This document shows, piece after piece, positions 15,738 to 61,467 of a stretch of 64,000 bases of DNA. The DNA lies in assembly GCF_032191835.1 (NCBI RefSeq), contig NC_083237.1, positions 17,360,001 to 17,424,000 on the forward strand. Direction: 5' to 3'. The notes under the pieces are model-generated. The model saw only the letters and a program-made list of their open reading frames with translations, was not told where the DNA came from and made no database searches. The first letter of the stretch is position 1. Every line of letters begins with the position of its first letter. This stretch comes from Heteronotia binoei. Taxonomy: Eukaryota. A program made the position numbers and the translations under genes.

Positions 15738-15852
15738 CACACACCCCTGTTGTAGCCAATTCTCCTGGAGCTTGCAGTAAGCCCTGTAAAAAGAGCCCTG
15801 TAAGAGCCCTGTAAGCTCTTGGAGATGTAGCATAATGTGCAAAGGAGTTCCA

Positions 15853-19877: not shown

Positions 19878-20066
19878 CAGGGCTTTTTTTTTTTTTTGCA
19901 GCAGGAGCTCCTTTGCATATTAGGCCACATACCCTTGATGTAGCCGATCCTCTAAGAGCTTACAGGACTCTTAGTACAGGGCCTGCTGTAAGCTCTTGGA
20001 GGATTGGCTACATCAGGGGTGTGTGGCCTAATAGGCAAAGAAGTTGCAGCTACAAAAAAAGCCCTG
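19878..20066. mobile_element. Palindromic hAT MITE; present in every module
   Basis: CAGGGCTTTTT...AAAAAAGCCCTG with near-perfect 8-bp TSD GGGTTTTC / CGGTTTTC. Confidence 0.88.
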
Positions 20067-22100: not shown

Positions 22101-22422
22101 GGACTCATTTCCTCTTTTGCTCTCCCTTTCATTTCCTATAGTGAAACCGAGGACTTTGGTCTAACCCAACCAGCGTGAGGAACTCCAGAAATTCCAGCGG
22201 AGTCATTCTCTTTGAACTGAGCCAGCCAGGATGGCAGGAGGAGACGGGAGTCAAGATTCCTGGGTTCTTGGACTGGAAATACGGTTGGCTGAGCTGTCAA
22301 CTATGAATTAGAGATCCCTGAGCCAGAAGACTTGTTGGAGAAGAAAATCAGGTCTGATGAGCTGTCAGTGGAGGGAGCATAAAGTAGATTCCTGACTCCT
22401 GTCGCTTCTGCATCCTGCTCAG

Positions 22423-22592
22423 CAGAGCTTTTTTTTTTTTTTGTAGCAGGAACTCCTTTGCATATTTAGGCCACACACCCCTGTTGTAGCCAATTCTCCT
22501 GGAGCTTACAGTAAGCCCTGTAAGAAGAGCCCTGTAAGCTCTTGGAGGATTGGCTACATCAGGGAGATGTAGCGTAATATGCAAAGGAGTTC
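22423..22592. mobile_element. Palindromic hAT MITE spanning the a/b junction (intact copy also at b/c); split by block X at the c and d ends
   Basis: gaactcctttgcatatt...aatatgcaaaggagttc inverted arms. The left half alone ends at 39333 and 61467; the right half alone starts at 15738 and 54689. Confidence 0.9.
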
Positions 22593-38300: not shown

Positions 38301-39333
38301 ATACTTTATGCTCAGTGAAAGGTGTTACTATTTTACAGTGACAGACTAGCATGGCTAACTCCTTTGGATCCAGGGCCTTTTCTGAGCAGGAACGCAGTTC
38401 CGGCTGGCTTGGCATCAGGGGGTGTGGCCTAATGTGCAAATGAGTTCCTGCTGGGCTTTTTCTGCAAAAATGCCCTGTGTGAAACAATGTTGCTGTTGCA
38501 AACTACTTCATTTCCAGCAGCAGTGCATAGGGCAGCCTCCATGCGGAAACACCCTACAACAGCTACAGGAATTATCTATACAGTTAAGCTAGTTTCATGG
38601 ACAGCGCCTGTCCCAACACCGGATTCAATCCATTTTTTTGTGAAGCTGCCAAGAGTTATCTAAACACCCCCAGTCTTTCAGAAAAGAATAGGCCAAAGGT
38701 TAACTGATTTGCTAACTGGCGTACACTCAGGACATGTATATCTGGCTGCTGCACAATCAACACAACACTTTGAGAGAGAGAGAAAGAGACAGACAGACAG
38801 AGACAGAGAATTCAACATTTCATTGCTGTTTTGTGTGATTGGTCCTATATCCTCTTTGATTTGCTCAGCCAGAGACTCCTAGGGGTTAAGATGCCATCAT
38901 AAAGTCAAAGGCAAAGCTATTGGATAGGCTCTTTGCAGTGCCCAGGGGTCACGTGACAGGACTCATTTCCTCTTTTGCTCTCCCTTTCATTTCCCATAGT
39001 GAAACCGAGACTTTGCTCTAAGCCAACCAGCGTGAGGAACTCCAGAAATTCCAGCGGAGTCATTCTCTTGAGCTGAGCCAGCCAGGAAGGCAGGAGGAGA
39101 CGGGAGTGAAGATTCCTGGGCTCCTGGACTGGAAATACGGTTGGCTGAGCTGTCGACTATGAATTAGAGATTCCTGAGCCACAAGACTTGTTGGAGAAGA
39201 AAATCAGGTCTGATGAGCTGTCAGTGGACGGAGCATAAAGCAGATTCCTGACTCCTGTCGCTTCTGCATCCTGCTCAGCAGAACTTTTTTATTTTTTGTA
39301 GCAGGAACTCCTTTGCATATTTCGGCCACACAC

Positions 39334-39486
39334 GTAAGGCTTGCTGAAGCATTAGTTATAGTAAGGCTTGCTGAAGTATTAGTTATGGTAAGGCTTGCTG
39401 AAACATTAGATATAATAAGGCTTGCTGAAGCATTAGTTATGGTAAGGCTTGCTAAAGTATTAGTTATGGTAAGGCTTGCTGAAGTA
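39334..39486 (+). repeat. Short 27-bp minisatellite array (5 units plus a partial); second copy at 61468-61620
   Basis: Unit starts at 39334, 39361, 39388, 39415, 39442 and 39469, in the same orientation as the long arrays. Confidence 0.96.
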
Positions 39487-39614
39487 TAGATTAAGTACTA
39501 TTGTTTGGAGTATCTTGCTAGGACTGCCCGCCACACAGACGTTCTACTAACTATTAAGGTTTTATTTGTACTATTATATCTCCTCCTAATTGCTGGTGTT
39601 TCATTTGTATTGGT

Positions 39615-39660
39615 AATAAAACTTGTTTATTAAAAAGAACATAGACTTGGGTTTATTCTT
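39615..39660 (+). terminator. Putative polyadenylation site (AATAAA 39615-39620, CA about 20 nt downstream, then a T/GT-rich element); copy at 61749
   Basis: Canonical hexamer, spacing and downstream element. Assignment to the X gene is inference. Confidence 0.45.
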
Positions 39661-39786
39661 GAGGCGCTGAATCCATGGGTCTTCCAGAGAGCCCACCGCC
39701 CAAGAGAGACGCTGGGCAGATTTGCTCCTACCATCACTGAGTGCCCATCCGAGGAAGAGATGAAGGTCTCCATAGAGTAAGACTTA

Positions 39787-40080
39787 AAAAAAAAAAAAGG
39801 TAAAGGTGCAAGCAGCAGTCATTTCCAACTCTGGGGTGATGGCGCATCACGATGTTTTCTCGGCAGACTGTTTTACGGGGTGGTTTGCCACTGCCTTCCC
39901 CAGTCATCGACACTTCCCCCCAGAAAGTGGGGTACTCATTCGGCCGACCTCGGAAGGATGGAAGGCTGAGTCAACCTGGAGCCAGCTACCTGAACCCAGC
40001 TTTGCCGGGATGGAACTCAGGTCCTGAGCAGAGCTTGGACTGCAATACTGCAGCTTTACCACTCTGCGCCACGGGGCTCC
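39787..40080 (-). mobile_element. Sauria-type tRNA-derived SINE; copy at 61920-62213
   Basis: Minus-strand head gagccccgTGGCGCAGAGTGGtaaagc, a B-box-like GAGTTCCATCC, and an (ACCTTT)-type tail. Confidence 0.8.
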
Positions 40081-40103
40081 TTGAGGAGGACTAGATAGCA
40101 TCG

Positions 40104-40328
40104 TATTTTATTTCTTTTATTTACTTCATCTCTATCCCACCTCACACCCCAATAGGGACCTAAAGTGCAGGCCATCCTCCATTCTATCCTCACAACGACC
40201 TTGGTGAGGCTGAGAGTGGTGCCGGGCTCAAGGCCACCAGGAGGCTTCCATGGCAGGAGTCGGGATTCAAACCCCAGGTCTTCCCAGGTCCTAGTCCAAT
40301 ACTCTTAACCAGTGCATCATGCTGGCTC
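40104..40328 (-). mobile_element. Older tRNA-derived SINE with an L2-like tail; copy at about 62237-62461
   Basis: Minus-strand ggtttgaatccc B-box; plus strand cattctatcctcacaac..gtgagg is a typical L2/CORE-SINE 3' part. Confidence 0.55.
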
Positions 40329-43300
40329 ATATCTTACCCGCAGCCAGCCATGCCTGGAGCTCCTCTAAACACAGCCATATCCAAAGAGGATAAGTTGGGC
40401 ATTTGCCCAAAGGCCAAGGGTGCCCTCCCCAACAACCTCCCCGAGGGTGGGAAGGAGTCTAGCAAGCCCTGGCTCTTTCTGGTGTGGAGGAGCCCAGGGC
40501 CTTTGAAGGCAGACCGCAGCCCCCTGTGCTGTTCCTTGGTGGCAGTGGGACATCCCTGAAAGAAGAAGAATAGCAGATTTATTCCCCGCCCTTCTCCCTG
40601 AATCAGAGACTCTAGATGGGGCCTGGAGATCTCTCAGGATTACAACTGAACTCCAGACCATGGAAGAGTCAAGTTTCAGCTTTCGTGTGCTAGAAGCTCA
40701 CGTCATCAGACAATAGTATGGAATGGCAAGCAGTCCTAATTACAGAGAAAGTGGGCAGTGAGTTCATATGCAGAGTCATGGGGATGTTATTTAGCAGATT
40801 TAAAGAATCACAAGTTGGGGTCTGGTGTTTATCAGTTAGTGTCTGATGAAGTGTGCTTAGAGCACATGAAAGCATACATTCTGAATAAAACTTTGTGGGT
40901 CTTAAAGGTGCAAAATTGACTCTTGCTTTGTTCCACTGCTTCAGACCAACCTGGATCTATCCAGACCATGGAGATCACTTCACCTGCAGAAAATGCCTGC
41001 TTTGGAGGGTTTATGTCTTTCCACAGTTTTATGGCATTATATACTGTCCCTCCACAGGCTCCACCCACAAATCTCCAGGCATTTCTCAGCCTGGAGTTGT
41101 CAAGCCTACCACCCCTGGACTGGGTTGTCTTTTTGGGTCTGAGACTTGTGTTTCAGTGGACGGATGAAACCTGGAGGGGGCCAGCTCTGGCACACGCTCA
41201 TTGGCTTCTTTTAAGATGTCTCTGCATGTCTGCTTGCAGGGTTGGCCTTGGAAATTCTAGACTCACACAGTGAATTCTCAGCCGATGCAGGGTGTTAGTT
41301 TCAGAGTTGGTCCGGTCCTAAGAACATAAGAGAAGCCATGTTGGATCAGGCCAGTGGCCCATCCAGTCCAACACTCTGTATCACACAGTGGCCAAAAATT
41401 TAGACATATACATATATATACACACTGTGGCTAATAGCCACTGATGGACCTCTGCTCCATATTTTTATCTAAACCCCTCTTGAAGCTGGCTATGCTTGTA
41501 GCTGCCACCACCTCCTGTGGCAGTGAATTCCACATGTTAATCACCCTTTGGGTGAAGAAGTACCTCCTTTTATCTGTTCTAACCCGACTGCTCAGCAATT
41601 TCATTGAATGCCCACAAGTTCTTGTATTGTGAGAAAGGGAGAAAAGTACTTCTTTCTCTACCTTCTCCATCCCATGCATAATCTTGTAAACCTCTATCAT
41701 GTCACCCCGCAGTTGACGTTTCTTCAAGCTAAAGAGCCTCAAGCGTTTTAACCTTTCTTCCTAGGGAAAGTGTTCCAAACCTGTAATAATTCTAGTTGCC
41801 CTTTTCTGCACTTTTTCCAGTGCTATAATATCCTTTTAATATATTATCCTATATATAATATATATTCTTTTAATATAATTTTAATATAATATCCTGGGTG
41901 AAGCTATGGGAAACAAACTACATGCTAATGGGTTGGTTGGCCAGGAGTGAAGCTCTATGATGCCTTCCTGTGAAATATACATGATAACTTTTGTAGTGCC
42001 TTCCTTTGAAATCTACAAACTTACAAGATAGCCTTTGAAATGCCTTCTTCTGAAATCTACAAATCTTTATGGCCACTTTTGAAGGAATCATTGTGGGGAG
42101 GGGGACAACTGAAGAGTGGATTGATTTCCTCTTGAAAGAATTACAGATTGCATTGTGAACATCCATTGGTGAGAGAGAAAGGACTTCTATTGTATGAGGA
42201 TTGTGATCCCTGTTCACAAGGACTTGTACAGTTAGTGACTAGTGGTGATGTATGCAGGGCTTTTTTGGCAGAAAAAGTCTAGCAGGAACTCATTTGCATA
42301 TTAGGCCACACCCCCTGATGTCACCATTGTTTCACATAAGGGTTTTTGTAGAAAAAGCCTAGCGGGAATACATTTGCATATTAGACCACACACCCTGACA
42401 CCAAGCCAGCCGGAACTGTGTTCCTCTGCGTTCCTGCTCAAAAAAGCCCTGGGTGTATGCATGATTTTGTAGCGAATTGGATAAGCATATGGAGCAGAAG
42501 TCCATCAGGAGCTTCCATCAGGGGCTATTAGCCATAGCGTATTGTTGGAACTCTCTGTCTGGGGCAGTGATGATCTGTATTCTTGGTGCTTGGGCTTGGG
42601 GGGGCAACAGTGGGAGGACTTCTGGTGTCCTGGCCCCACTGATGGACCTCCTGATGGCACCTGGGGTTTTGGCCACTGTGTGACACAGACTTTTGGACTG
42701 AATGGGCCATTGGTCTGATTCAACATGGCTCTTCTTATGTTCTTATGAATTAATTGAATATATTAATTAAGTGTATGGATTAAAGTTACATTAAGATAGT
42801 TTATAAATGCGAGTATTGTATACATTTTAATTAGTAATTGTGGTTGCAATAGTCTGAGTGTCAAGCACAGTAAAATTCGATTGATAATTGATTGTTTTAG
42901 GGTCCTCCATAACACTGGTCTGTGAAATGTCTCGGAGGTCTGTTAACTCTGTTATTCTTTCCCCAACCCCTTCTTGCTTTATTGCTTGCAAAGTAGAAGT
43001 AGAGAGAAACTAAACTAACTTGAGAAGAAGTAATCAGCACCTTCCCATACATTCCTGTTAGGGAGTGCGACACATCTGGAGAGAGCAAGGACAGAGTCCT
43101 GATAACGCCGTGAGAATGTAGACATTTATGATAGTTTATGTGTGAGAGCTATCCCTTGCCCCCACCTTTTGGAATCCTTTTGAAGTAAGCCTTAAAAATA
43201 TTGTATCAATGTATCTGTAGCATCATTCTCAAGAATCTGTTACACTGAAAGTATCCTTATATCAATAAATGTAGTTTTGTATCAAGCTCGACTCGTCATT

Positions 43301-46116
43301 GAAACCGCATGCTTGACACTGAGGGCTTTGTTTCACTTTGCTCCATTTATCATTGCAATTCTCCCAGGATTTGGTAACCTCCAGGTGGGGCTTGAAGATC
43401 TCCTGGAATTACAACTGGCCTTCAAAAGACTCCCACATTGCATCGAAGGAAACACCATTTTCTAATGCTGCACGCTGTACTTAGAAATGAAGTCTTGTGC
43501 CCTTAAGAACATAAAAAAAGCCATGTTGGATCAGGCCAATGGGCCATCTGAATGAACTAGATCTTTCAAACTTCTAGTATGTCTGAAGCCAATGAAAGGA
43601 GGCATACTGCTCCCAGGAATATCAAGCAAAAGATGCCAATGTTTATAAAGGTGAGAAAAAGGGGTGTGGTTGAAGGCACAAGAGATTTTATTAGTAGTCC
43701 TCTTACAAAAGATCTACAAAAGTAGATTTAAAATCTAAAAATTTACAAAAGTAGTCCTCTTACAAAAGTCCTCTACAAAAGATCTTTACGATCCACACTG
43801 TAAGCCCTACCCACTGCAGATTGCACAATTAATCTAGAGTAGCCACGTGTCAAAAATGCATTCTGCGACTTTTTACAGTCCCTCATATAATCACTGTGTT
43901 TAGTGGAGTTCCTTTCTACGTGTAAAAATTGGCTGTATGGCAAACTCTCACACATGCATAAGAAGTACATAGATAAGCTCTTTGGGATCCTGAATAAATA
44001 TGAATATAATGATGTTGATCCACACTGTACACAGCTCCATTACTTTTACGGGATCCGGCAATGCAGATATGGTTTCTTTTTTAGGCTGGTGTATTTACCA
44101 CACCTGTAATTATACTCTGGCCATGCACCTATTTAGGAACCCTACAGATCGGAGTTCCGTTTTATATTTTCGATCCTTCCATCCACGACATTTGCTGGCC
44201 CCGGGTCATCCAGTGACGTTCCATGCTGTGATTCAAAACTGGGTCTTCCAGATATTGTCCAATGCTTATACCACACTAGCTCTCAAGGCTTTGAGATACC
44301 TTGGGCTTTGATATCATGGAAGAGGAAGAAAAGTTCTCTCTAGCCCCTTCTCAGTGTTGCATGTTTTGTAAACCTTTATTTCTCACCTTGCAGTCAGTTG
44401 GGATTACCATGTTCTTTGCCTTTTTGAGGTGGGAGCAAAGAGGACTGCATCCAGTAATACAACTGGAACAACATCAAAGTTTAACATAATGGCCTTAGGC
44501 AATGGGCCTCCAATAGGGTTGCCAGGTCTCTGTTGGAAAATACCTGGAGACTTTGGGGGTGGATCCAGGAGTGGGTGGGCACTGGGGAGGGGAGGGGCCT
44601 CACTCAGCAGGAGACAATGCCCGAGTCCACCCTTCAAAGCAGCCACTCTCTCCAGGGGAGCTGATCTCTGCCAGCTGGAGGTCAGTTGTAAAAGCAGATC
44701 TCCAGGCCCCACCTGGAGGCTGGTAACCCTAGCCTCCAATTACCTTTTTGCTTGCTTATCTTCAGAGGCTGAAGTTCTCTTGAGGCACCTTCTTGGCCCA
44801 TTTTGCCCTTGAACCAAGATGGCTTTTCTCTCCCTTTTCTCCTCAGAACTCCCCCTGTCTTCCCTCATGCCTCTCCTTTTCCCTTCAGGCCTGGAGATTT
44901 GAGAGCAGCACAGGGCCAGAGATTCCACCCTCCAAAAGCATCCGAATTCTCCAGGGCTACTGATCTCTGTAGTCTGGAGATGAGTTGTAATCCCAAGAGA
45001 TCCCCAGACCCCACTTGGAGGATGGCACCCCTAAATCCTGGGGACTCTTCTAGAGGGTGGAGTCTGTGACATTATGCCCCGCTGAGGTCCCTCGCCTCCC
45101 CAAACCCGGCCTCCTGCAGTCACCACTCCCAAAACTCCAGCCATTTTCTCATCTGGACTTTATAGCCCTACAGACAGGGAAGTCCTCCAGAGACACCAAG
45201 GCCACAGACGTTTCTTGTGTTGAAAACATTTTATTGCATTTAGAAAGGGAAAGGGGAAAGAGAAATGGGAATAAAAAAATTTTCGCTGTTCCATTTCTGA
45301 ATGATACAAAAATAGATAACACATGAAAAGCAAAGTATTTCTCTATATAAGTTAAGTTGCAACAAATTACTGTCTTTTGATCTGTTGATATAATCTCATT
45401 TTAACAATCAAAATTCTACTAATTCATAGTTTCATACTACTAACATGGCCTGTAAAGGACAAAGTTATACCAGAGTGTCTAACCAAGTATAGAAGGGATT
45501 CCAAAGGATCTGTTTCTTGTACTGATCTCTCCTTCGGGGGAGAGGAAAGTTTGTCCAACTCAGCTGTTTCTAATACTTTTCCAATTGGATCTTGTTTCTA
45601 ATGCTCTTGTGAGAGGCAGCCCTGGATGCTCAGAGGAACTTGGGGATGTGAAAATGCTATCATATATTTAAAATAGTTCCATAAATAGTCATATTTCTGG
45701 GCATGCAGGTGTTTGGGCTGGTCCACGGCATACAATTGGCCACTGGCTCTTTCAGTTGATGGGAAATGCGGCTCCGTGGTCAACACAGCATGAGTGACAC
45801 TGATGAAATGCCAGAAACACAAACAAGTTTTAACAGCAGTTTGCTTCCCTTCAGGCCTTGACGTCTGTTTTCTCTGTTTGGTGGGTTACCCCAGCAGTGC
45901 CAGGTGGGAAACGTTCTACCCTAGTGAAACAATCCAGAGCCCATTGTGATGCAATCTCGGAACCTAGACTGCCTTTTCCGTTGGGTGGATACAGGTTCAA
46001 CTGTCAACTGACTCTTGGACTAGCATCCATCTGCTGGGAAAATTGAGAGCTCAGTTTATTCAATTCTCCAGAGCAGCAATCAGTCATTGCCTAATCTGGA
46101 CTTTGTAGCCCTACAG

Positions 46117-48307
46117 ACAGGGAAATCCTTCTCTTCGATCCAGAGAAACCAGTGGTTGTAATGGTTGAGAAAATGGTAAGGAAGATTCTGACACTCTTTA
46201 TCTGGGGGTTGAAAGGCTAAGGGAGAGGGTTGCCAGCCTCCAGTTTGGGCCTGGAGATCTCCTGCTTTTACAACTGATCTCCAGCAGGCAGAGATCAGCT
46301 CCCCTGGAGAAAATGGCTACTTTGAAGGTTGGACTGTTGGGCATTGTGCGATGCTGAAGCCCCTCCCCTCCCCAAACCCCACCTTCTCCTGGACCCAAAG
46401 TCTTCAGGTGCTTTCCAACACAGATCTGGTGAAGTGACTCAACTGTGGAGGAGGGAGGCATGCCCAGAAATTGCACTGGCATAGGTGAAAGGCCAGAGAG
46501 ATTTGGCAGCCCAAAGGGACCAAATCCAAAATAGCTCAGCCTTGGGTGGTAAAAAATTCTTATAAACCAGTTACAAAATTAAATCTTATCTTATAAGCCA
46601 ATTACATAATTGGAGAGAAGCTATGTTCTACTGATCTGCTGTCTTACTGTGGATCATATTAGATATATCACAACAAATAAATTGTACAGTAAAAGTTAGT
46701 AATTTGGTGCCCTTTAAGTGTAATCAGTAGTCTGATTTTATAAAGAATGTTTTTTTAAAAGAAAAAGGCCACAAATGGCTCTGTCTTTATCTCCATACTT
46801 CCAACAGTTCACAAAAGGGCCTTTCTCTTCAAAAAGAGAACCATTTCCCTGAATTTGCATTGATGATTCTGATGATCTCTTCCAAGAAACATCATCTTCT
46901 GGGGAGGCATGAGGAGGACAGGGAGTTGTGAGGGGAGAAGTGCAGGGGGGGCTCCCTCTCCATTCTGCCTGGATCCAGCCCACCACCATGGGGCCTTTTG
47001 CCTAGCATTTCAATTGCTATTCCTACCAGACGTGGGGAAGAGAATGGGGAGGAATTGTTAGGAGATGGTCTCCCAATAGAACCCCTAGTAGCTCCAAGCC
47101 AATCAAGGCATCTCACCTGCTGGTGATTCTTTCTACATGCCTGGTAAGCCAGTGGCTGTCTTAACATCTGACCTTTCAAGGGTCCTCCTTGAAAAGAAAA
47201 GAGAAATGAATGAGCTAAAACAAACAAACGAAAGGAAATGTGCCTTCTTGTGATCAAGAAGCCAACTGTGATGCTTCTGAGAAGGGTCTTAAACCCCGCC
47301 TTCTCTGGACCCTTTGGCCTTGCAGCTGCAGCATCAGGAGGTGCAAGAGGAAGAGATGGCCCTTCAGGGGAGCCTTCAGGAGGTGCTAGAAGGTGCCACA
47401 GAAGAGTCTTTGGTTTGTGACACCCAGGAGGAGTTTTGTCCTGTGCCGAGCGAGAGCCCGGAAGGAAACCTGGAGTGCTCAGCAAATGAGGTGAGTCTGG
47501 AAAGGAAAGACAGAAGCTGGACAGTTAATCAGAGGCACAGGTGGGCTTAGGGGAAATGTGCCTTCTTGTGATCAAGAAGCCAACTGTGATGCTTCTGAGA
47601 AGGGTCTTAAACCCAGTCTTCTCTGGACCCTTTGGTCTTGCAGCTGCAGCATCAGGAGGTGCGAGAGGAAGAGGTGGCCCTTCAGGGGAGCCTTCAGGAT
47701 GTACTAGAAGGTGCCACAGAAGAGTCTTTGGTTTGTGACACCCAGGAGGAGCTTTGTCCTCTGCCGAGCGAGAGCCCGGAAGGAAACCTGGAGTGCTCAG
47801 CAAATGAGGTGAGTCTGGAAAGGAAAGACAGAAGCTGGACAGTTAATCAGAGGCACAGGTTGGCTATGGGGCTGGAGTAATGAGAGAAGGCGCAGTTAGA
47901 GGTCAATGTCCAGAGAGGGAATGTGAGGGCCACCCAGCTGCCAAGAGATTTCCCTGGGAAGCTGGATCATGAGTGTCTGTTCCCGTTGTCACCTTGTCTC
48001 CTCTGAATGGGAGGAGCTCCCCAGCCCGTGGGCAGAGAAAGCTACTCCCCCTGAGGCCAGAGTGACAACTCCTGCCACAGAACCTGGGGCCCGGGGTCAC
48101 CACTTGGGGGTAAATGGACTAGATGAAAAATAAAGGAGGTGAAATACGCATTCTTGCTTCTTCGTGGAGAAGCCAGCTGTGATGAGGGTCTTAAATTAAA
48201 TCAAGAACCAAAAAAGGTAAGAAATAAACGTAGCAGAGGGCCAATTGTTAAAACCTCATATATACTTGTTATAATAAAAATACACATATTAATTAAAATT
48301 ATATTAA

Positions 48308-48388
<81 letters not shown>

Positions 48389-51300
48389 CCCATTGAAAGC
48401 CTTGTAACAAAATACGAATGACATATACACAATGATGATGATGATAATGATGATATTGGATTTATATTCCACCCTCCACTCCGAATCTCAGAGTCTTAGA
48501 GCTGCTCACAATCTCCTTTCCCTTCCTCCCCCACAACAGACACCCTGTGAGGTGGGTGGGGCTGAGAGGGCTCTCACAGCAGCTGCCCTTTCAAGGACAG
48601 AGTCTCAGAGCGTCTCACAATCTCCTTTCCCTTCCTCCCCCACAACAGACACCCTGTGAAGTGGGTGGGGCTGAGAGGGCTCTAAAAGCAGCTGCCCTTT
48701 CAAGAACAGAGTCTCACAGAGGCCCACAATCTCCTTTCCCTTCGTCCCCCACAACAGACACCCTGTGAGGTGGGTGGGGCTGAGAGGGCTCTAAAAGCAG
48801 CTGCCCTTTCAAGGACAGAGTCTCACAGTGGCTTACAATCTCCTTTCCCTTCCTCCCCCACACAGACACCCTGTGAGGTGGGTGGGGCTGAGCGGGCTTT
48901 CACAGCAGCTGCCCTTTCAAGGACAGAGTCTCACAGTGGCCCACAATCTCCTTTCCCTTCCTCCCCCCCAACAGACACCCTGTGAGGTGGGTGGGGCTGA
49001 GAGGGCTCTAAAAGCAGCTGCCCTTTCAAGGACAGAGTCTCAGAGCAGCTCACAATCTTTTTTCCCTCACAATCTTTTTTTCTCACAATCTTTTTTTGGG
49101 ATACGAGTTTAATAAAGTTGCAGAGATTTTTCTGTTAGGATTACAAATGGAAAAATTTCCAAAAGAAGACAGAACTTTAATCTGGTACTTGCTCTCAGCT
49201 GCTAGGACATTGTATGCGCAGTTGTGGAAGCAAGAAAAAATACCAGAGAAATGGGATTGGATTATAAATGTTATGTCATGGAGTGAAATGGACAAATTAA
49301 CAAGAATATTAAAAGACTATGACTTAGAAGTTTTTAAGATGGAGTGGAAGAATTTCAGAAGATATGTAGAAAAAGTGTGGAAAATAAAAGGACATTGGAC
49401 AATCTTTGATAATGATTAAGTTTTTAAAACAAGAATATAACTTTTGGTTTTTTAATAGTTAAGGGTACCTTTAATATTTGTGTTTTTTTAAGTAAATAAC
49501 ACTGGTGGGGGTCAAGTAACGGGGGGAGGGGTGGGGGAAAAGTAAGATATGGGGTAGATAAATTTTTCTTTTTTTAAGTTGTAAGATAAAGATATAGATT
49601 TGCTACCATATGTTACCAATAAAAATTGTTTATGCAAAAAAACCCCCACCAAGTTTGAGGTACAAATAGGCACATATTACAAAGAACTCTTACAAAGAAT
49701 TAGCAAAGAATATAACAACATGTTGTCAAAGGATTTCATAGCCAGAGTCCATTGGTTGTGGTAGAATTTCTGGGCGGTGTGGCCGTGGTTTTGGAATTTT
49801 GAGACATGATGTTTTGCCCGTGACTGTGACTGGCATCCTCAAAGGTGTAACGCAGAAAAAGAAAGCTCCCACAAGATAATGACTCAGCCCTACCCTACCT
49901 TCCTGAGTAGATACAAATTACCTGCCTACCAACTTCTTCTCAATTTGACGCAGAGAGAACTCCAGTTTTCGGGGTTACACCTCTGAGGATGCAAAACGTC
50001 GGGTCTCATCATGGCAAGACCATGGCCACACAGCCCGGGAAATCTACAACAACCATTATAACAATACTGGACCAAAAAAGGAATTTTCCAAAGAGAGATC
50101 AGTAGGCACAAGACAGGAATGTTCAAGAGACCTCTCAGGAATAAATCATGCATCCAGTGCATATGCACGGGTGGTAAAAGATGTTACTGTTGTCTGTCTT
50201 CCAGTTCTGGTCCAGAAAGTAATGCTATATTCCATTATTCAGAGCCAAGACATCGACAGAAGGCAGCAAGAGGAACAGGAAGAAGAGGAAGCCTCTCAGG
50301 ATAGTCGAAATGTTGCGGAGGAAGGGGCTGTAGACGAACCTTTGCTTTCTAGTTCCCCAGAGGAGTCTTCGCCTTCGCCAGATGAACAACACAAAGTACC
50401 CTTGGAGGTCATAGTAAATGTGGTAAGTCTTAAGAACATAAGAGAAGCCATATTGGATCAGGCCAAAAGTCCATCATTCCAACACTCTGTGTCACACAAT
50501 GGCCAAAAAATCTAGGTGTCATCAGGAGGTCCATTAGTGGGGCCAGGACACCAGAAGCCCTCCCACTGCTGCATCCCCCCAAGCACCAAGAATACATAGC
50601 ATCAATGCCCCAGACAGAAAGTTCCAACAAAACGCTGTGGCTAATAGCCACTGATGGACCTCTGCTGTTTATCCAACCAACTCTTGAAGCTGTCTACGCT
50701 TGCAGCTGCCACCACCTCCTGTAGCAGTGAATTCCATGTGTTCATCACCCTTTGGGTGAAATAGGACTTATCTTCAAAGGAGAGAGAGAAGCTGGACAGA
50801 TAAAGAGAAAAGCTAGTTGAATAAGGGGTCGGGGGGGGGAGTGGGGTGAGAGAAGAATTCAGGCAATAATCCTCTCAGTCCTGGAGATCAATAAATGAGA
50901 AACTAGAACAAGCAGATGTCTTCTCTGCTCAGACTTGTTGGAGCTCTCCCAGATTATTCCTCAGAACGTGGGGTCTCTATGGCACCAGAGTTAAATCTTG
51001 TGTGTGCAAAACATGGTGCCCTACCACTGAGCTATGGGACCTTCCAGAAACATCTGGAGCTGCTTTATGCAGAGTCAGTCTCTAGGCCTGCCCAGCTTTA
51101 GTATTGCCAACTCTAACTGGCAGCGGCTCTGCAGACCTTCACAATGTCTGCTGTTGCCTGAAATTCTTTAAATAACCTGAGACCTGCTGCATGGAAGTCT
51201 TGGCCTCTGACCATGGAGAAATGGGCCCTGCTTCCTATCAAATGGTTGCTGGGAAACCAGGTCAGCTTATGGAGTTGCCTCATGCCGACTCAGAGAGTTG

Positions 51301-54028
51301 GTCCATCTGGCTCAGCATTTTCCATTGGCTCTCCACCTGCAGGGCCAGCCCTCTCCATTAGGCATCCCTAGGCCACTACCTAGGGTGCCATCCAGGGGGG
51401 GGTACTGGGCTGGGTCCTCCCCCCGCCCTCAGCGAGGGAAATGGGTGAGCACGGCACCTGCACCTCAGAGTGCATGTGCTGCCTGGCTACCGTCACTCAG
51501 CCCAGCCACCATCCCTTGTGAAAGCTTCCAGAAGCGATGGCGGACAGGCTGAACGATGGCGGCTGGGAGGCATATGTGCTTTGAAGCGCAGGCGCTAGGC
51601 CACACCGTTGCTGTGGTGCTCACCCTCACTGGGGGCGAGGGAGGAGGGGTGCAGGCTGTGGGGTGAGGGGTGGCAGGGTAGGACCTCGCCTTGGGTGCCA
51701 GACCCCCTGGAGATGGCCCTGATCCCCTCACAAAAAACATTCCTCTGTCACCTGAAGTGTTTTTTTTTTGTTTCAAATGGTGTTTCCCTTCCAGGTGACC
51801 TCTGTCTACAGCCAGGACAGTGATGGGCAGGTGACAGAGAGCCCCCAGACCCCCAGGCCAGAGTCTCCTGACGGTGACTACTTAGCACAAGAGAGCTGCT
51901 ACCTCACAGACCGCGAAGACCTCCACCAGGACTCTGGTGCTTCCACGGGCTACTTCCCTTGCTACCTCACCTACAGCAATCTCCCCCCCTACCAGTCTGA
52001 GAGTGACGATGAACTTCCAGACCCCCCGGCCAGTCCTGAGGCCAGCCTCCAAGTTGAGGGCACTTTGCAGGACAAAGCCAGCGAGAAGGAAGGAGGAGTG
52101 GAAGGCAGCCCCAGAGGGGAAGAAGCCAAGGTGAAGAAGCCCCACCCTGGCAAATGGTCCTGGCTGCCCAGCCCGCAAGGGGCTTTGGGAATGCACAGCG
52201 AGGGAGGTGCTAGAGGCAAACTCTAGAAAGTCTGAGGAATGGGGCCTGCTGGCAATACAGGGCCAGTGCAGAGAAGAATGCAAGATGCCTCCTGGTCACA
52301 TCACACGGAAGGGTTCCAGTGCCAGACCTCTCAGGGAAGTTCTGGAGCAGGGCACAAAAATGTCGGCCCTCTTTTGTTGCTTGTGCCCAGTTCCAGAGAT
52401 AGATTGCTCCTGTATGCAGGAGTTCTAAATAGTTCACTATTCCATGAATTTGTTGAATTCAGGAGGCCAGTTTTTCTGTTGGTACAGCCTCCCAGCAGAA
52501 AGGACCCACGTTGGGTTGCAAATTTAGTGCCTGGCAAAAAACACCTCAGAAAAGACCCAGTTTATGTCAAATGGGGCCAGCCTTTGTTTTTATTCCAAGG
52601 GATGCTCATTTTGTGTGGGATAGACGAAGTCTGGAAGATGTCAGCTATCATGTAAAAGAGATTCTAGTCCTCATTGTGCAGAAATTTACTTATTTATAGG
52701 GTTGCCAAGTCCAATTCAAGAAATATATGGGGACTTTGGGGGTGGAGCCAGGAGACCTTGGGGTGGAGCCAGGAGGCATTGGGGGCAGAGCCAGGAGCAA
52801 GGGTGTGACAAGCATAATTGAACTCCAAGGGCGTTCTGGTCATCACATGTAAAGGGACAGCACACCTTTTTAAATGCTTTCCTTCCATAGGAAATAATGA
52901 AAGCTAGGGGCACCTTATTTTGGGGCTCATAGAATTGGACCTCCTGGTCCAATCGTTTTGAAACTTGGGGGGTATTTTGAGGAGAGGCACTAGATGCTAT
53001 TCTGAAAATGTGGTGCCTCTAACACAAAAAACAGCCCCCCCAGAGCCCCCGATATATCCAGATCAATTCTCCATTATACCCTATGAGAATCGATCTCCAC
53101 ATAGGGAATAATGAAGTGCCTAGCAGACATTTCCCTCCCCCTCCCTGTTTCTGGGGACTCTGAAGTGAGGGACTGGCCTCTTTACTCACGAGTTGCTGCC
53201 AACTTCTTCAAAGTAACACAGACACCCCATCCCAAGAGGAAGCCTTTCTGAGCGGAGACTGAAGCCTCTGGAGGGGGAAAGGCACATGGGGGCTGTGGGG
53301 GTGGGCTTCCCTTCCCCTGCTGGCCAGCTGAGTGGGGGGGGGAAGGAGCCTGGGAAAGCGGGAGAACCTCCCCCCCGCTGGGACCTGGGGATTGGCAAGC
53401 CTACTTATTTATTATATTAGGCTTTTATACTAACCTCCCCGCAAGCTTGTTAGAAAACATCCTTAAAGTGGCATAGCTGGTCAGTGTGGAAGTACAAGGC
53501 CACATCTTTTTAGCCTGGGTGAAGGAATATTGTAGAGCTGCAAATTAATGCCTTTACGTAAATGCTGCCTTTGCAGTCCCAGAGTCCATAGAGTATGAGC
53601 ATCAAAGTGTGACCTGTAAGGGACAAAGCAATGGGCAAAACCAAAACCAAAGCAGGCCACTGCTGCAGTCAGCACAGCCCCCCCCCCCCCCTTCAAGCAG
53701 CTGCTTGCTAGAACTCCAGTTCCAAGAATCCCTCCGTTCAGAGCCCTGGCTGTGAGAATGACTTCTCTTCTTCCTGCAGAGTCCGGCAGTGGCCAAGAGA
53801 GTAGAGCCAACCCCGTCGGCTCCCAGCTGCCCGTCCGACGCCCCCACGTCCCGCCGGAGCATCACCAACTTTTTTCAGTGGGTCCGCAATGTCTTTAGCC
53901 GGTCATCCCTAAGGAGTCAACAGCGCAGCCCAGCTGCAAGAGGCGAAAGGGAGCGCAAAAATATCGGCAAGCGGCTGCGAGGCTGGATCAGGAAGCACCG
54001 GGGGCGAGTGCACCCCGACAACTGCTGA
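46117..54028 (+). CDS. Candidate multi-exon gene in block X (copy 2)
   Basis: The same exons at 46117-46175, 47030-47143, 47326-47490, 47644-47808, 50243-50422, 51795-52130? and 53780-54028. All splice dinucleotides and frames are retained despite point substitutions. Confidence 0.55.
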
Positions 54029-54126
54029 GGCGCAGACAGGTCACGAGCGCTCAAACTTTGTGAACGAGGACTTCCTGCTGCTTTTAAACTGTTTACTCAT
54101 CATGGTTACTGCTAGTATTAGATATA

Positions 54127-54674
54127 ATAAGGCTTGCTGAAGCATTAGTTATGGTAAGGCTTGCTGAAGCATTAGTTATGGAAAGGCTTGCTGAAGCATT
54201 AGATATAATAAGGCTTGCTGAAGCATTAGTTATGGTAAGGCTTGCTGAAGCATTAGTTATAGTAAGGCTTGCTGAAGCATTAGTTATGGTAAGGCTTGCT
54301 GAAGCATTAGATATAATAAGGCTTGCTGAAGCATTAGTTATAGTAAGGCTTGCTGAAGCATTAGTTATAGTAAGGCTTGCTGAAGCATTAAATATAATAA
54401 GGCTTGCTGAAGCATTAGTTATGGTAAGGCTTGCTGAAGCATTAGTTATGGTAAGGCTTGCTGGAGCATTAGTTATAGTAAGGCTTGCTGAAGCATTAAA
54501 TATAATAAGGCTTGCTGAAGCATTAGATATAATAAGGCTTGCTGGAGCATTAGTTATAGTAAGGCTTGCTGAAGGAATAGTTATGGTAAGGCTTGCTGAA
54601 GCATTAGTTATGGTAAGGCTTGCTGGAGCATTAGTTATAGTAAGGCTTGCTGAAGTATTAGTTATGGTAAGGCT
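54127..54674 (+). repeat. Same 27-bp minisatellite, 20 full units
   Basis: Identical flanks to the 13529 array; unit starts 54127 to 54667 (540/27 = 20). Confidence 0.97.
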
Positions 54675-54688
54675 GAATCCCACCACTG

Positions 54689-57600
54689 CACACACCCCTG
54701 TTGTAGCCAATTCTCCTGGAGCTTGCAGTAAGCCCTGTAAAAAGAGCCCTGTAAGAGCCCTGTAAGCTCTTGGAGATGTAGCATAATGTGCAAAGGAGTT
54801 CCACTTTGGTGTAGCAGTTAAGTGTGTGGACTCTTATCTGGGAGAACCGGGTTTGATTCCCCACTCCTCCACTTGCAGCTGCTGGAATGGTCTTGGGTCA
54901 GCCATAGCTTTCGTAGGAGCTGTCCTTGAAAAGGCAGTTTCTGTTAAAGCTCTCTCAGTCCCACCCACCTCACAGGGTGTCTGTTGTTGGGGGGAAGGTA
55001 AAGGAGATTGTGACCACTCTGAGATGCAGAGTGTAGGGCAGGGTATAAATCCAATATCATCATCTTCTTCTTCTTCTACTACTACTACTACAAAAGAAGC
55101 CCTACTGCCCAGCATGGATTCTTTTTTGCGGGGCAGGGGGAGAGGGTTGCCATCAAGTCACAGCTGAATCCCTCCCCCCAAAAAATTCTGTTTTTATTTT
55201 AATTGTAGGTGACCTTGTCGGGATATCAAGGCAAGAGAGGTGGTTTGTCATTTCTTGGCCTCTTCATCACAACCCTGGACTTCCTTGGGGGCCTCCCATC
55301 CTCATATTGACCCCCTGCTTAGCTTCTTCGATCTGACAAGACCAGGCCTGCCGGGGCATCCAGGTCAGGACAACATGGACGTTAGCCAATATCTATTTCG
55401 GATCGGGTACCAGGGTCCCGCCCAGCCTTCTCTGGAGACCTTGCGCCCTCTCCACCGTTGCCATCTCCTCTCCGTGCCCTTTGGGCGCCTGAGCATCCAC
55501 TGTGGGGAGCCAATCTCCTTGCCGTTGCCCCTTCTCTACGACAAGATTGTCCGGTGCCACCGGGACGGTTTCTGTTACGAGCTGAACGGGCTTTTCTTGT
55601 GGCTGCTGCAGACACTGGGATTTGACACCAAAGCAGTGTCCGGTCATGTCCGGAACCCTTTCACGGGGCACTATGGCCCCCCTATGCACCATATGGTGAT
55701 TTTGGTCCAGTTGGATGGACGCTCCTTCCTCTGCGATGTCGGTTTTGGGGAAGCCTTTCTAGAGCCACTGGAGTTGAAGCCGGACTCAGAACAAGTCCAA
55801 GATGGAGGCATCTTCTGGCTCGGCAATAAGGGGGGAGTTTGGGTCTTGGAGCGCCGGGAAGTTCCTGGCAAGGAAGGGAGACCTTTGTATCAATTCACCC
55901 TTGAGGAGAAGAAGCTGGAGGATTTTGCTGACATGTGCCTTTATCACCAGACTTCGCCCAGTTCTATCTTCCCCTGCAAATCCTTCTGTTCCTTGCATCA
56001 GGAAGACGGTGGGCGCCTTACCTATATGGGATGGCGTCTCATCTCCACAATGGGGGAGAAACGTACGGAGACCCCACTGCAAAGCTCTGAGATCCCAGCC
56101 GTCCTGCGTGAGAAATTTGGGATTCAGTTGGAGAGGGACTTCGAGCCAAAGGATGAAAAGATCATGCCACCTCCTGAAGAAGACTGAGAAGGTAGAAGGG
56201 AAACGGGTCTCCGATTTGGACAGCAGGCTAGAAACTGGATTATACATCATCTCTTTGCACACAGGTTTCAGTCTCTGTCAGAACTGATGTCATATCACAG
56301 GACCATTGCAGCAGTCTGTTTGAAAAAAAAAATGCTGGTCCTTTACAAAAGCAATTTGATCATTTTTCTAGTGCGGTTTACAGTTTTTTCGAGTTGCACT
56401 TAAAGGCCTCGATATAATCTTAAGGACCACAACATGTGAACTTGAATGCATATTGTTAATGAGCGTATGGAAAATTTATTGTGTAAAATTCATTGAATGA
56501 TTATACAGGTGACTGCAAATAATATATTTCTATTATTAGACACGTGGTGTAGTTTCTTTTTGTTTCTCCTTTGTTCATTATCATCCCATTCCCTATTTGT
56601 GGTGTGTTTAAAGAAAAGCCTGTGCAAGCAGAAAACCAGCAGACCAAGGGGACAGATCTGCTAAAGTCATAATTAAAAAGTGAGTGCAGCTGTGGGTAAC
56701 AAGTCCCAGGGCTTTTTTTTTTTGTAGCAGGAATTTCTTTGTATACTAGGCCACAGGCCCCTGATGTAGCCAGTCCTCCAAGAGCTTTCAGTAGGTCCTG
56801 TACTAAGAGCCCGGTAAGCTCCTGGAGGATTGGCTACATCAGGGGTGTGTGGCCTAATATGCAAAGGAGCTCCTGCTAGAATTCCACCCCTGCTAACAAC
56901 AAACTTCTTTATTGAAAGAACCAAACTGGAGAGCAATCAGGCAAAACAGGCAATAAACATAGTTGGGGAAGGACACAACTCTTTTAGTCAGCGGGAATCT
57001 GCCCCATTGGTCTCTCCATTCATTTGCATGTACATTGATACACGCCTTGTGTCCCGATTGGCCAGTTGAGACAGAATAGCCAATCAGAACGTAGGCATTT
57101 GGGTCCTGAAGGGTAGAACCATGCTTCAGTTACTAACACTATGAACAGTATATGAGCAAGAACACAGAACAGCACATACTAGTCTTGCTAGTTTTCTATC
57201 TGCAGGAAGTTTGGGCATGGGCAAGCATTCTAAAACACCATCTCCAATCTAATCACGCAGACCACTCTACCTGCATGTGTGAACGAGGCCTCCTCGTGCC
57301 TCTGCACTGGGTTTAATGAGCTCCTCTCCATGCAGAGATGCAGCAGCCTTACCTGTCCACAGTGGAGGCAGGCTCACAGGAACTCATGCAGATCTGCAAC
57401 AGGTAGACTCCAAGGGCAGATTGCTCTTATTCTTTAAAAAAAGCCTTGGGCAAGAGGTAAGAATGAAGCACGAATCCAATTTTAACTCAGAAGCAAGCCT
57501 GCATCAGCTACCAGCTGTTAGGGAAACAGCAGGTTCAAAGAACAACAGATGTGTACCAGTCACAGAGGAGCTGCATGGAGAGCATTGATAGCCACCCTCT

Positions 57601-60600: not shown

Positions 60601-61467
60601 AAATGCCCTGTGTGAAACAATGTTGCTGTTGCAAACTACTTCATTTCCAGCAGCAGTGCATAGGGCAGCCTCCATGCGGAAACACCCTACAACAGCTACA
60701 GGAATTATCTATACATTTAAGCTAGTTTCATGGACAGCGCCTGTCCCAACACCGGATTCAATCCATTTTTTGTGAAGCTGCCAAGAGTTATTTAAACTTC
60801 CCCAGTCTTTCAGAAAAGAATAGTCCAAAGGTTAACTGGTTTGCTAACTGCCGTACACTCAGGACGTGTATATCTGGCTGCTGCACAATCAACACAACAC
60901 TTTGAGAGAGAGAGAAAGAGACAGACAGACAGAGACAGAGAATTCAACATTTCATTGCTGTTTTGTGTGATTGGTCCTATATCCTCTTTGATTTGCTCAG
61001 CCAGAGACTCCTAGGGGTTAAGATGCCATCATAAAGTCAAAGGCAAAGCTATTGGATAGGCTCTTTGCAGTGCCCAGGGGTCACGTGACAGGACTCATTT
61101 CCTCTTTTGCTCTCCCTTTCATTTCCCATAGTGAAACCGAGGACTTTGCTCTAAGCCAACCAGCGTGAGGAACTCCAGAAATTCCAGCGGAGTCATTCTC
61201 TTGAGCTGAGCCAGCCAGGAAAGCAGGAGGAGACGGGAGTCAAGATTCCTGGGTTCTTGGACTGGAAATACGGTTGGCTGAGCTGTCAACTATGAATTAG
61301 AGATTCCTGAGCCACAAGACTTGTTGGAGAAGAAAATCAGGTCTGATGAGCTGTCAGTGGAGGGAGCATAAAGCAGATTCCTGACTCCTGTCGCTTCTGC
61401 ATCCTGCTCAGCAGAACTTTTTTTATTTTTTGTAGCAGGATCTCCTTTGCATATTTAGGCCACACAC
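54689..61467 (+). repeat. Single NAT module d
   Basis: Collinear with modules a-c; bounded by CACACAC at 54689 and at 61461-61467. Confidence 0.95.
55375..56187 (+). CDS. NAT: Arylamine N-acetyltransferase (NAT family), copy d, open 270 aa, possibly degenerating
   Basis: The true ATG is at 55375, inside ORF-track 55240..56187. Triad intact. It shares a-type residues (Q13, H91, P95, M104, H105, E167, D270) and has private L8F, R25P, S38R and T50P. Confidence 0.92.
   Translation: MDVSQYLFRIGYQGPAQPSLETLRPLHRCHLLSVPFGRLSIHCGEPISLPLPLLYDKIVRCHRDGFCYELNGLFLWLLQTLGFDTKAVSGHVRNPFTGHYGPPMHHMVILVQLDGRSFLCDVGFGEAFLEPLELKPDSEQVQDGGIFWLGNKGGVWVLERREVPGKEGRPLYQFTLEEKKLEDFADMCLYHQTSPSSIFPCKSFCSLHQEDGGRLTYMGWRLISTMGEKRTETPLQSSEIPAVLREKFGIQLERDFEPKDEKIMPPPEED

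What the first reader, a model, noticed from the sequence alone, without database searches (positions are those of the whole stretch)
39320..54700. Two loci interlocked as circular permutations: block X splits a MITE in the NAT upstream region, and the NAT modules split a minisatellite in X
Seen: at the a/b and b/c junctions the palindromic MITE reads ...ggcCACACACccctgttg... uninterrupted. At 39327-39333 and 61461-61467 it breaks after CACACAC and enters the 27-bp array in mid-phase. At 15738 and 54689 it resumes at CACACAC, directly after a 17-bp hAT-like terminus. So X is a 15.4-kb insert with a 7-bp target-like duplication. X also begins and ends in the same-orientation 27-bp array, with the candidate gene's stop codon at its right end and the likely poly(A) signal at its left end. 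X is therefore itself opened inside what looks like one 3' UTR. Inference: this reciprocal permutation fits integration of a circular intermediate (eccDNA), or a one-ended/aberrant hAT transposition that joined two unrelated loci, after which the composite was amplified.
Basis: partly seen in the sequence, partly recalled or inferred. Interest (0 to 1): 0.78.

Follow-up and report, generated by a model that had tools for sequence, protein, structure and literature searches.

The report
Tandem-gene unit inserted into NAT cluster
In the gecko Heteronotia binoei, one 15.4-kb repeat unit of a tandem gene array that sits on another chromosome in a second gecko was pasted into a small transposon just upstream of a drug-metabolising NAT gene. 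The pair was then copied at least seven times, which makes this a clean example of a known kind of genome rearrangement, not a new mechanism.

Summary
Block X (39334-54688) interrupts a hAT-type MITE that is intact at the NAT|NAT junctions. X is flanked by a duplicated CACACAC and carries a 14-nt hAT-like terminus at its right edge. It begins and ends in the same 27-bp minisatellite.

An outgroup settles the history. In Gekko kuhli the sequences at X's right end (stop-codon exon) and left end (AATAAA region) are contiguous, about 135 bp apart, with a single proto-unit where Heteronotia has the array. The gene family carried by X (LOC132583222) stands there in tandem arrays on a different chromosome from NAT. 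The G. kuhli NAT upstream region has neither the MITE nor X.

So the "circular permutation" needs no circle. X is one period of a tandem gene array read in another phase, and the NAT modules are likewise a tandem array. Synteny of both cluster flanks shows that NAT is native and X is the immigrant. All seven X copies seen share the same two junctions, so there was one insertion followed by co-amplification.

RNA shows the last X exon spliced over the junction into the NAT coding exon. The mechanism is inferred: a hAT-linked break was repaired by copying or capturing one array period. A similar hAT repair scar was noted elsewhere in this genome (s1-323869).

The parts
39334..54688 (+). Block X, copy X2 (15,355 bp): one period of the tandem gene array of LOC132583222, inserted into the MITE. 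Other copies in the window are X1 1-15737 (cut by the window start) and X3 61468-64000.
   Evidence: Self-BLAST, X1 vs X2 98.7%. Colinear with G. kuhli tandem copies.
39276..39333 (+). Left half of the interrupted hAT-type MITE, ending in the left CACACAC copy (39327-39333). The same structure is at 61461-61467.
39334..39484 (+). Left 27-bp array (5.6 units). Its first 62 nt are identical to the last 62 nt of the X1 right array.
   Evidence: TRF; unit listing.
39485..39672 (+). Native downstream flank of the array (D'), with AATAAA at 39615-39620. Orthologous to the sequence that directly follows the stop exon in G. kuhli.
   Evidence: blastn: 39541-39606 = L001 14231-14296 at 86%; 39541-39669 = L006 14916-15044 at 83%. 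Alignment A1.
43579..54028 (+). Gene G (LOC132583222 type), X2 copy. Exons lie at about 43579-43674, 47311-47493, 47629-47811, 50231-50428, 51780-52130 and 53777-54028, with stop TGA at 54026-54028. The annotated copy is in X1 (3013-13430, 388 aa, P0122).
   Evidence: tblastn of P0122; called gene in L002/L003.
54040..55208 (+). Intron of a spliced X-NAT transcript (GT..AG). It contains the right array, the hAT end, the duplicated CACACAC, the right MITE half and a SINE.
   Evidence: read laying joint 54037->55207 (cut +2) in one RNA contig of run X1 (depth 15.9) and one raw read of run X12. Donor conserved in all X copies and acceptor in all NAT copies.
54117..54674 (+). Right 27-bp array (20.7 units here, 81.7 units at 13519-15723 in X1). 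It grew from a single-copy sequence still seen in G. kuhli.
   Evidence: TRF; A1; unit counts of 11-81 among copies.
54675..54688 (-). 14-nt hAT-type terminus (CAGTGGTGGGATTC on the minus strand; 17 nt if the shared GCT is counted), abutting the target. The same terminus is at 15724-15737.
   Evidence: Two mismatches from the verified MITE TIR CAGGGGTGGAATTC. Chance 3.2e-6 per site.
54689..54802 (+). Right half of the interrupted MITE, beginning with the right CACACAC(C) copy (54689-54696).
22420..22592 (+). Intact MITE at the Ma|Mb junction (the 'empty site'). A second intact copy is at 30855-31027 (Mb|Mc).
55375..56187 (+). NAT coding sequence of module Md (270 aa). Others: Mb 23070-23882, Mc 31506-32318, and Ma from 16421 with an in-frame stop at 16904-16906.
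   Evidence: Pfam PF00797, E=1e-66 to 1e-67; translations.

Best explanation
What is there (shown). The native locus is a NAT gene whose upstream region acquired a hAT-type MITE and which had begun to duplicate in tandem. One period (15.4 kb) of a tandem array of an unrelated, fast-evolving gene (LOC132583222, 'G') was inserted once into that MITE, about 0.9 kb upstream of a NAT coding exon. In G. kuhli this array lies on another chromosome. The excerpt starts and ends in the minisatellite of the G 3' region, so it looks circularly permuted. Unequal exchange then amplified X+NAT and NAT-only modules into a cluster with at least seven X copies and ten NAT copies. The last X exon now splices across the junction into the NAT coding exon.

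How the insertion happened (inferred). A hAT element end was joined to the target at CACACACC, either by a resident element that later broke or by an aborted integration. The free 3' end, trimmed to 14-17 nt of the terminus, paired through the 3-nt microhomology GCT with the minisatellite of the G array. It then primed copying of one full period (SDSA/BIR-type synthesis with template switching). Synthesis fell off in the next minisatellite, and the end was ligated without homology to the other side of the break. That side keeps 7 of the 8 target bases.
For: Insertion into an intact element:
- Searches show X interrupting a real MITE.

Single event:
- Junctions are identical in the X0, X1, X2, X3, X4, L009 and L010 copies, apart from private point changes.

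X ends were once contiguous:
- L001 13899-14096 = X 53876-54073, followed by L001 14231-14296 = X 39541-39606.
- The same holds twice in L006 and L007.
- Alignment A1 shows both X ends overlapping on one single-copy segment.

G is tandem in the outgroup:
- Period about 6.4 kb, in the order stop exon, D', next upstream region.
- X 44515-47336 is colinear with the start of the next copy (L006 26130-28420).

The loci are unlinked in the outgroup:
- G copies lie on CM122939.1 at 8.6-14.2 Mb; NAT lies on CM122952.1 at 40.28 Mb.

NAT is native:
- The upstream flank L011 350-1189 = L012 4-851.
- The downstream flank with the 323-aa gene, L009 13660-19646 = L012 13674-20246.
- In G. kuhli the NAT upstream region is contiguous, without MITE or X.

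hAT link:
- The 14-mer lies within 2 mismatches of a verified TIR and is oriented as a transposon end-target joint.
- The flanking duplication is 7 of 8 bp in a family that makes 8-bp duplications.

Splice:
-.
Against: - No donor array was located in Heteronotia. Only one G protein is annotated, and it lies inside the cluster. Copy-paste versus cut-paste is therefore open.
- The exact 14-mer was not seen anywhere else in about 200 kb examined, so the element subfamily is unverified.
- The duplicated CACACAC is low-complexity and only 7 of 8 bp long.
- The left end of X has no transposon sequence and no microhomology.
- The overlap of the ends is ambiguous (+8, +62 or -19) because of the 81-bp higher-order period.
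- Only one outgroup species was used, and its records are flagged UNVERIFIED_CONTAM by the source.
- The splice rests on one RNA contig and one read.
Confidence: 0.6

Rival explanations
1. eccDNA route. Intrachromatid recombination in the tandem G array released a unit-length circle. The circle broke in its fragile minisatellite and was ligated by end joining into a break at the MITE.
For: X is exactly one period of a tandem array. Tandem gene arrays are known sources of unit-length circles that can reintegrate (PMC6890164, PMC4352087, PMC9527254). The left junction has no microhomology.
Against: A circle is not needed once the donor is known to be tandem. It does not by itself explain the hAT terminus or the duplicated target bases. 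If the ends truly overlap by 8 or 62 nt, a cut circle cannot give that without a staggered cut.
Confidence: 0.2
2. Direct transposase-mediated move. This would be a composite or one-ended hAT transposition, in which a hAT end sitting in the donor minisatellite carried its flanking 15 kb to the new site, as in maize alternative transposition.
For: Size (14-23 kb), host-DNA content and 8-bp duplications of maize Ac/Ds composite insertions resemble X (PMC4270019). The hAT end is joined to the target as in a strand-transfer product.
Against: Composite insertions carry transposon termini, with the element bodies, at both outer ends. X has 14-17 nt at one end and nothing at the other. No X copy or G. 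kuhli G copy has such an element in the minisatellite. The donor is on another chromosome in the outgroup.
Confidence: 0.12
3. Reverse direction: the NAT modules were inserted into the 3' minisatellite of a resident G array.
For: The junction geometry is formally symmetric. The NAT block is flanked by GTAAGGCT on both sides, 8 bp.
Against: Both outer flanks of the cluster are syntenic with the G. kuhli NAT locus. The first and last units of the cluster are NAT modules with native flanks.
Confidence: 0.03
4. Assembly artefact: chimeric joins in a collapsed repeat.
For: The region is a nested repeat with copies up to 99.9% alike.
Against: The same junctions occur in up to seven diverged copies with private substitutions. 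An RNA splice crosses the X|NAT junction region.
Confidence: 0.02

Closest known systems
Composite insertions made by alternative (reversed-ends) Ac/Ds transposition in maize (Zhang et al. 2014, PMC4270019)
   Same: A hAT-superfamily end is joined to a target. The insert is 14-23 kb of ordinary host DNA, flanked by a target duplication of hAT length. Replication plus end joining is involved.
   Different: Maize composite insertions have complete transposon copies at both outer ends and come from nearby on the same chromosome. X has a 14-17-nt remnant at one end only. Its source is a tandem array that is on another chromosome in the outgroup.
Ds-like hAT elements filled with 'filler DNA' or gene fragments (Du et al. 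2011, PMC3260210); abortive gap repair (own knowledge: Rubin and Levy 1997)
   Same: A hAT break is repaired by copying unrelated host DNA from another chromosome, with introns included.
   Different: Filler is usually under a few kb and lies between two retained termini. Here it is 15.4 kb, holds a whole multi-exon gene, and one terminus is gone.
Unit-length eccDNA from tandem gene arrays and its reintegration (CUP1: PMC6890164; reviews PMC9527254, PMC8414719)
   Same: The moved piece is exactly one period of a tandem array and is opened at a repeat.
   Different: No circle junction can be shown. The transposon end and the target duplication are not features of circle reintegration.
Birth-and-death evolution of vertebrate NAT genes by tandem duplication (Sabbagh et al. 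2013, PMC3601968)
   Same: A lineage-specific tandem NAT expansion on one chromosome.
   Different: Here the repeat unit has picked up a foreign gene that is co-amplified and spliced to NAT. At least ten NAT copies were seen. I did not check the copy numbers given in that paper.
Replicative template-switch rearrangements (FoSTeS/MMBIR; own knowledge, Hastings et al. 2009)
   Same: There is a 3-nt microhomology at one junction and none at the other. Breakpoints lie in a palindromic MITE and a minisatellite.
   Different: These models do not predict a transposon terminus or a target-site-like duplication.

Membership tests
hAT-type MITE (the interrupted element) | Terminal inverted repeats starting CAG and a palindromic body | tested here: met
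   Copies at 19883-20066, 34579-34765 and L010 15944-16114 have both termini.
hAT-type MITE (the interrupted element) | 8-bp target-site duplication | tested here: met
   GATGTATG flanks the related copy at 1689-1886. GGTTTTC (7 of 8) flanks the copy at 19883-20066.
hAT-type MITE (the interrupted element) | Many dispersed copies | tested here: met
   21 half-sites in the window against 0 expected. Reads from many loci end exactly at the terminus 56892 (table 7).
X as a DNA transposon (hAT or other) | Inverted termini at both ends | tested here: not met
   The right end has a 14-17-nt hAT terminus. The left end is minisatellite with no terminus.
X as a DNA transposon (hAT or other) | Independent insertions with different flanks | tested here: not met
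   All seven copies share the same two junctions. The G. kuhli homologs are ordinary tandem gene copies.
X as a DNA transposon (hAT or other) | Transposase gene | tested here: not met
   Pfam scans of 14 of the longer X ORFs found no transposase domain. Not every ORF was scanned.
Composite insertion by alternative hAT transposition | Transposon copies at both outer ends of the insert | tested here: not met
   compared with PMC4270019.
Composite insertion by alternative hAT transposition | 8-bp target duplication | tested here: inconclusive
   The right copy is CACACACC. The left copy keeps 7 of the 8 bases.
eccDNA reintegration | The insert equals a circularised segment, i.e. a circle junction inside or a unit of a tandem array | tested here: inconclusive
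   X is one array period, which a circle or a linear template explains equally well.
eccDNA reintegration | Matching deletion or circle at the donor | not testable with these tools
   The donor locus in Heteronotia could not be searched.
Tandem segmental amplification | Repeated units with identical junctions and graded divergence | tested here: met
Arylamine N-acetyltransferase (NAT) | Acetyltransf_2 domain over the full length | tested here: met
   PF00797, 224-228 bits against a cut-off of 22.8. 84-87% identity to the NATs of four other gecko species.

The most novel reading that the evidence does not exclude
A hAT transposon end acted as the primer for replicative capture of a complete 15-kb host gene unit from another chromosome. 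The insertion created a new two-gene transcription unit, in which the G open reading frame ends 11 nt before a splice into the NAT exon. Co-amplification to seven or more copies was then driven by selection on NAT expression. This would be a vertebrate counterpart of maize composite insertions, with a functional consequence.
Probability: 0.2. Interest if true: 0.65.

Novelty: new member of a known kind. Interest (0 to 1): 0.45.

Why it matters
This is an unusually legible natural record of how a gene from one chromosome gets relocated and then co-amplified with a xenobiotic-metabolising gene. Both breakpoints are preserved at base resolution. The empty target site survives in sister copies, and the unbroken donor arrangement survives in an outgroup.

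The case also shows that a 'circularly permuted' insert need not mean a circular intermediate when the donor is a tandem array. It adds a candidate vertebrate case of hAT-associated capture of long host DNA. Finally, it offers a testable chimeric G-NAT transcript that may change NAT regulation in this gecko.

Tried and rejected
- **Hidden X-NAT homology.** A sensitive blastn of X against a NAT module found only shared transposon pieces. X and the NAT modules are not old paralogs, and there is no copy of the last X exon in NAT-only modules.
- **Gene G family.** Pfam found no family for the gene G exons.
- **Other copies in this genome.** The search of earlier findings by sequence found no other window with G. 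The operators note that such a blank means nothing.
- **Two MITE copies.** I considered that the two MITE halves were two different MITE copies recombined by unequal crossing-over. This is rejected because the halves are exactly complementary around one CACACAC and rebuild one element.
- **Filler from the nearby MITE.** I considered that the 14 nt were copied from the nearby MITE end at 34751-34764. This is unlikely: 2 of 14 differences is far more than the 3-5% between modules.
- **Random filler.** Rejected at 3.2e-6.
- **RNA limits.** RNA and DNA contigs did not give pieces that bridge 54688/54689 directly (table 8). Only the splice crosses it.
- **Spliced model.** One exon was searched by reference, and after that database proteins were used.
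- It did not turn away any stretch.
Full report
**Layout and identity of the window**

The window is Heteronotia binoei GCA_032191835.1, CM063339.1:17,360,001-17,424,000. Locus L002 17354-20813 equals window 1-3460 at 100%, and the coordinates of L003 and L004 agree.

Self-BLAST and a four-way alignment of the modules give this order: X1 (1-15737, cut by the window start), NAT modules Ma, Mb and Mc (15738-39333), X2 (39334-54688), Md (54689-61467), X3 (61468-end).

- X1 and X2 are 98.7% alike. X1 and X3 are 99.9% alike over the 1.3 kb visible.
- Each module has a full arylamine NAT open reading frame (Pfam PF00797), except Ma, which has an in-frame stop.
- The 5' parts of the modules fall into two types. 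Those that follow X (Ma, Md) are 99% alike, and those that follow another module (Mb, Mc) are 99.5% alike. The two types are 92.6-97% alike.

At the Ma|Mb and Mb|Mc junctions the sequence reads GGC-CACACAC-CCCTG without a break. At 39327-39333 and 61461-61467 it stops after CACACAC and runs straight into 27-bp units. At 15738 and 54689 it resumes at CACACAC, directly after GAATCCCACCACTG.

The interrupted element is a bona fide MITE family.
- The window has 21 half-sites against none expected.
- Other copies carry 8-bp target duplications.
- A copy with both CAGGGGTGGAATTC termini lies at L010 15944-16114.
- In the RNA and DNA runs, reads from many loci end exactly at such a terminus, 56892.

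Splicing the two halves together and dropping one CACACAC rebuilds the element. There are 4 mismatches in the first 117 aligned columns, which span the junction.

The arrays at the two ends of X have the same unit and orientation. The first 62 nt of X are identical to the last 62 nt of the X1 right array, and that 62-mer occurs nowhere else in the 81-unit array. Because the left array has an 81-bp higher-order period, the ends can be read as overlapping by 8 or 62 nt or as missing 19 nt.

**An outgroup resolves the 'circular permutation'**

One exon of the gene in X (51768-52226) found a Gekko kuhli protein, P0001. I fetched its locus L001.

L001 is colinear with X2 from 45621 to 54073. About 135 bp later it matches X2 39541-39606 at 86%. 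So in G. kuhli the stop-codon exon at the right end of X and the AATAAA-bearing sequence at the left end of X are neighbours.

Alignment A1 shows the two Heteronotia ends overlapping on one single-copy G. kuhli segment. That segment is recognisably the ancestor of the 27-bp unit. The minisatellite therefore arose in place, in the 3' region of this gene, and X is cut inside it.

**The donor is a tandem array, so no circle is required**

P0001 has four paralogs in G. kuhli, all on CM122939.1 between 8.6 and 14.2 Mb.

In L006 and L007 the copies are head to tail with a period of about 6.4 kb. The order is stop exon, then the D' segment (X 39541-39669), then 2.5 kb further the upstream region of the next copy (X 45711-46043), and so on.

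- X 44515-47336 is colinear with the start of a following copy (L006 26130-28420).
- X 39594-40437 is colinear with the downstream region in L005.

X thus has exactly the content and order of one period of such an array, read from minisatellite to minisatellite. The 4 kb in between with no match (40437-44515) holds a CR1 tail and MITEs.

**NAT is the resident, X the immigrant**

The G. kuhli NAT (P0008) is on a different record, CM122952.1. Its locus L012 matches the Heteronotia cluster at both outer edges.

- L012 4-851 matches L011 350-1189, upstream of the first NAT copy.
- L012 13674-20246 matches L009 13660-19646, downstream of the last main-cluster copy. This stretch includes a 323-aa single-exon gene at 87%.

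In G. kuhli the last 650 bp of what I call R (window 30208-30854) run directly into the NAT exon region (L012 9095-9763, then 9816 onward). Neither the MITE nor X is present. The MITE is therefore part of the native NAT upstream region. The NAT|NAT 'junction' at the MITE is just that region repeated in a tandem array. The true duplication joint lies elsewhere in R (27.7-30.1 kb).

**One event, then amplification**

Using the eight distinct Heteronotia NAT proteins I mapped the cluster. The order is:

1. Native upstream flank.
2. NAT (P0133), with an intact, older-looking MITE.
3. X0, then NAT (P0002).
4. X1, then Ma, Mb and Mc.
5. X2, then Md.
6. X3, then NAT, then NAT (P0127).
7. X4, then NAT (P0128).
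8. Native downstream flank.

A further partial X+NAT copy lies 236 kb downstream (L010). Every M|X and X|M junction is the same joint, with private point changes in L008, L009 and L010. X copies are 97.9-99.6% alike over the 4.9-kb stretch compared. Right arrays range from 11 to 81 units. This excludes a chimeric assembly and also excludes independent transposition of X.

**A transcript now links the two genes**

I laid RNA runs of the same species on 51001-57000. This showed a canonical GT..AG joint from 54039 to 55209, in one RNA contig (run X1, depth 15.9) and one raw read (run X12).

- The donor lies 11 nt after the stop codon of gene G.
- The acceptor is the native acceptor of the NAT coding exon, 166 nt before the ATG. 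It is conserved in G. kuhli and in all NAT copies. The donor is kept in all X copies.
- The right-hand array, the hAT end and the MITE half are therefore intronic in this transcript.

The evidence is thin. It does not show where the transcript starts.

**Mechanism (inferred)**

The 14 nt between the array and the target are within two mismatches of a verified TIR of this genome. They are oriented so that the terminal CAG abuts the duplicated target. The chance of this is 3.2e-6 per site.

The right target copy is CACACACC and the left keeps 7 of these 8 bases. The family makes 8-bp duplications. The array-to-terminus joint shares 3 nt (GCT), and the left joint shares none.

The simplest reading is a hAT-linked break. 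A 3' end carrying the last 14-17 nt of the element switched into the minisatellite of the G array and copied one period. It fell off in the next minisatellite and was end-joined. The polarity fits either abortive gap repair after excision of a resident element or an aborted single-end integration.

Maize offers the nearest documented parallels: Ds-like elements with filler DNA copied from other chromosomes (PMC3260210), and 14-23-kb composite insertions with 8-bp duplications (PMC4270019). X fails the defining feature of the latter, since it has no element at the left end and only a stub at the right.

A unit-length circle from the array, opened in the minisatellite and captured at the same break, remains a fair rival (PMC6890164, PMC9527254).

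**Limits**

- I could not search the rest of the Heteronotia genome, so the donor, and hence copy versus cut, is unknown.
- The only annotated G protein of this species lies inside the cluster.
- There is a single outgroup species, and its records carry an UNVERIFIED_CONTAM flag from the source. The long colinear matches nonetheless show that they are gecko DNA.
The exon was searched by reference and database proteins were used afterwards.

**Verdict**

The 'interlocked permutation' is the expected look of one tandem array invaded by one period of another. The event belongs to known classes: duplicative insertion at a transposon-linked break, followed by tandem amplification of a NAT cluster (PMC3601968). 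What sets it apart is that it is exceptionally well preserved and has produced a chimeric transcript.

Noticed in passing
window 54040-55208 (also 13442-16254 in X1): The last exon of the co-amplified gene G has a splice donor 11 nt after its stop codon. RNA joins it to the NAT coding exon, so X-adjacent NAT copies may be transcribed as G-NAT chimeras or use this exon as a new 5' exon.
   Followed up: partly
window 6668-7299 and 47234-47865: A 318-bp tandem duplication doubles one G exon. The annotated 388-aa protein P0122 contains the segment twice.
   Followed up: partly
window 16904-16906: The NAT copy of module Ma has an in-frame stop codon and is absent from the annotated protein set. It is a likely pseudogene inside the young cluster.
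   Followed up: partly
window 7919-8497 and 48489-49067: A 109-bp tandem array (5.3 units) inside X matches SINE-like pieces that occur singly in the NAT modules (e.g. 22711-22815). This is another retroposon-derived minisatellite.
   Followed up: no
L010 (CM063339.1:17,708,244-17,729,056): A partial X + NAT (P0132) + native downstream flank copy lies 236 kb beyond the main cluster, next to an Epimerase/DUF1731 (SDR39U1-like) gene. It has the same X|NAT junction with one point change in the hAT end.
   Followed up: partly
between L008 and L009 (CM063339.1:17,454,863-17,462,322): Copy X4 is about 6 kb longer than the other X copies. The extra stretch was not fetched and could hold an insertion or an unbroken X-X joint.
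   Followed up: no
L001 18108-22223 (G. kuhli CM122939.1 about 8.59 Mb): Kilobases of telomere-like CCCTAA and CTAACCCTAACG repeats lie 4 kb downstream of a G copy, far from the chromosome end. The G family sits in a duplication-rich, interstitial-telomere region, with copies in both orientations over 6 Mb.
   Followed up: no
window 27725-30070 (module Mb): The real head-to-tail joint of the NAT tandem duplication lies here, between native downstream and native upstream sequence and close to another MITE copy (28329-28505). It is not at the MITE that X interrupts.
   Followed up: partly
window 24007-25656 and 32443-34089: A 1.65-kb piece is present in Mb and Mc and absent from Ma and Md. It is partly present in the last cluster copies (L009, L010) and in G. 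kuhli (L012 up to 11709), so Ma and Md carry a deletion rather than Mb and Mc an insertion.
   Followed up: partly
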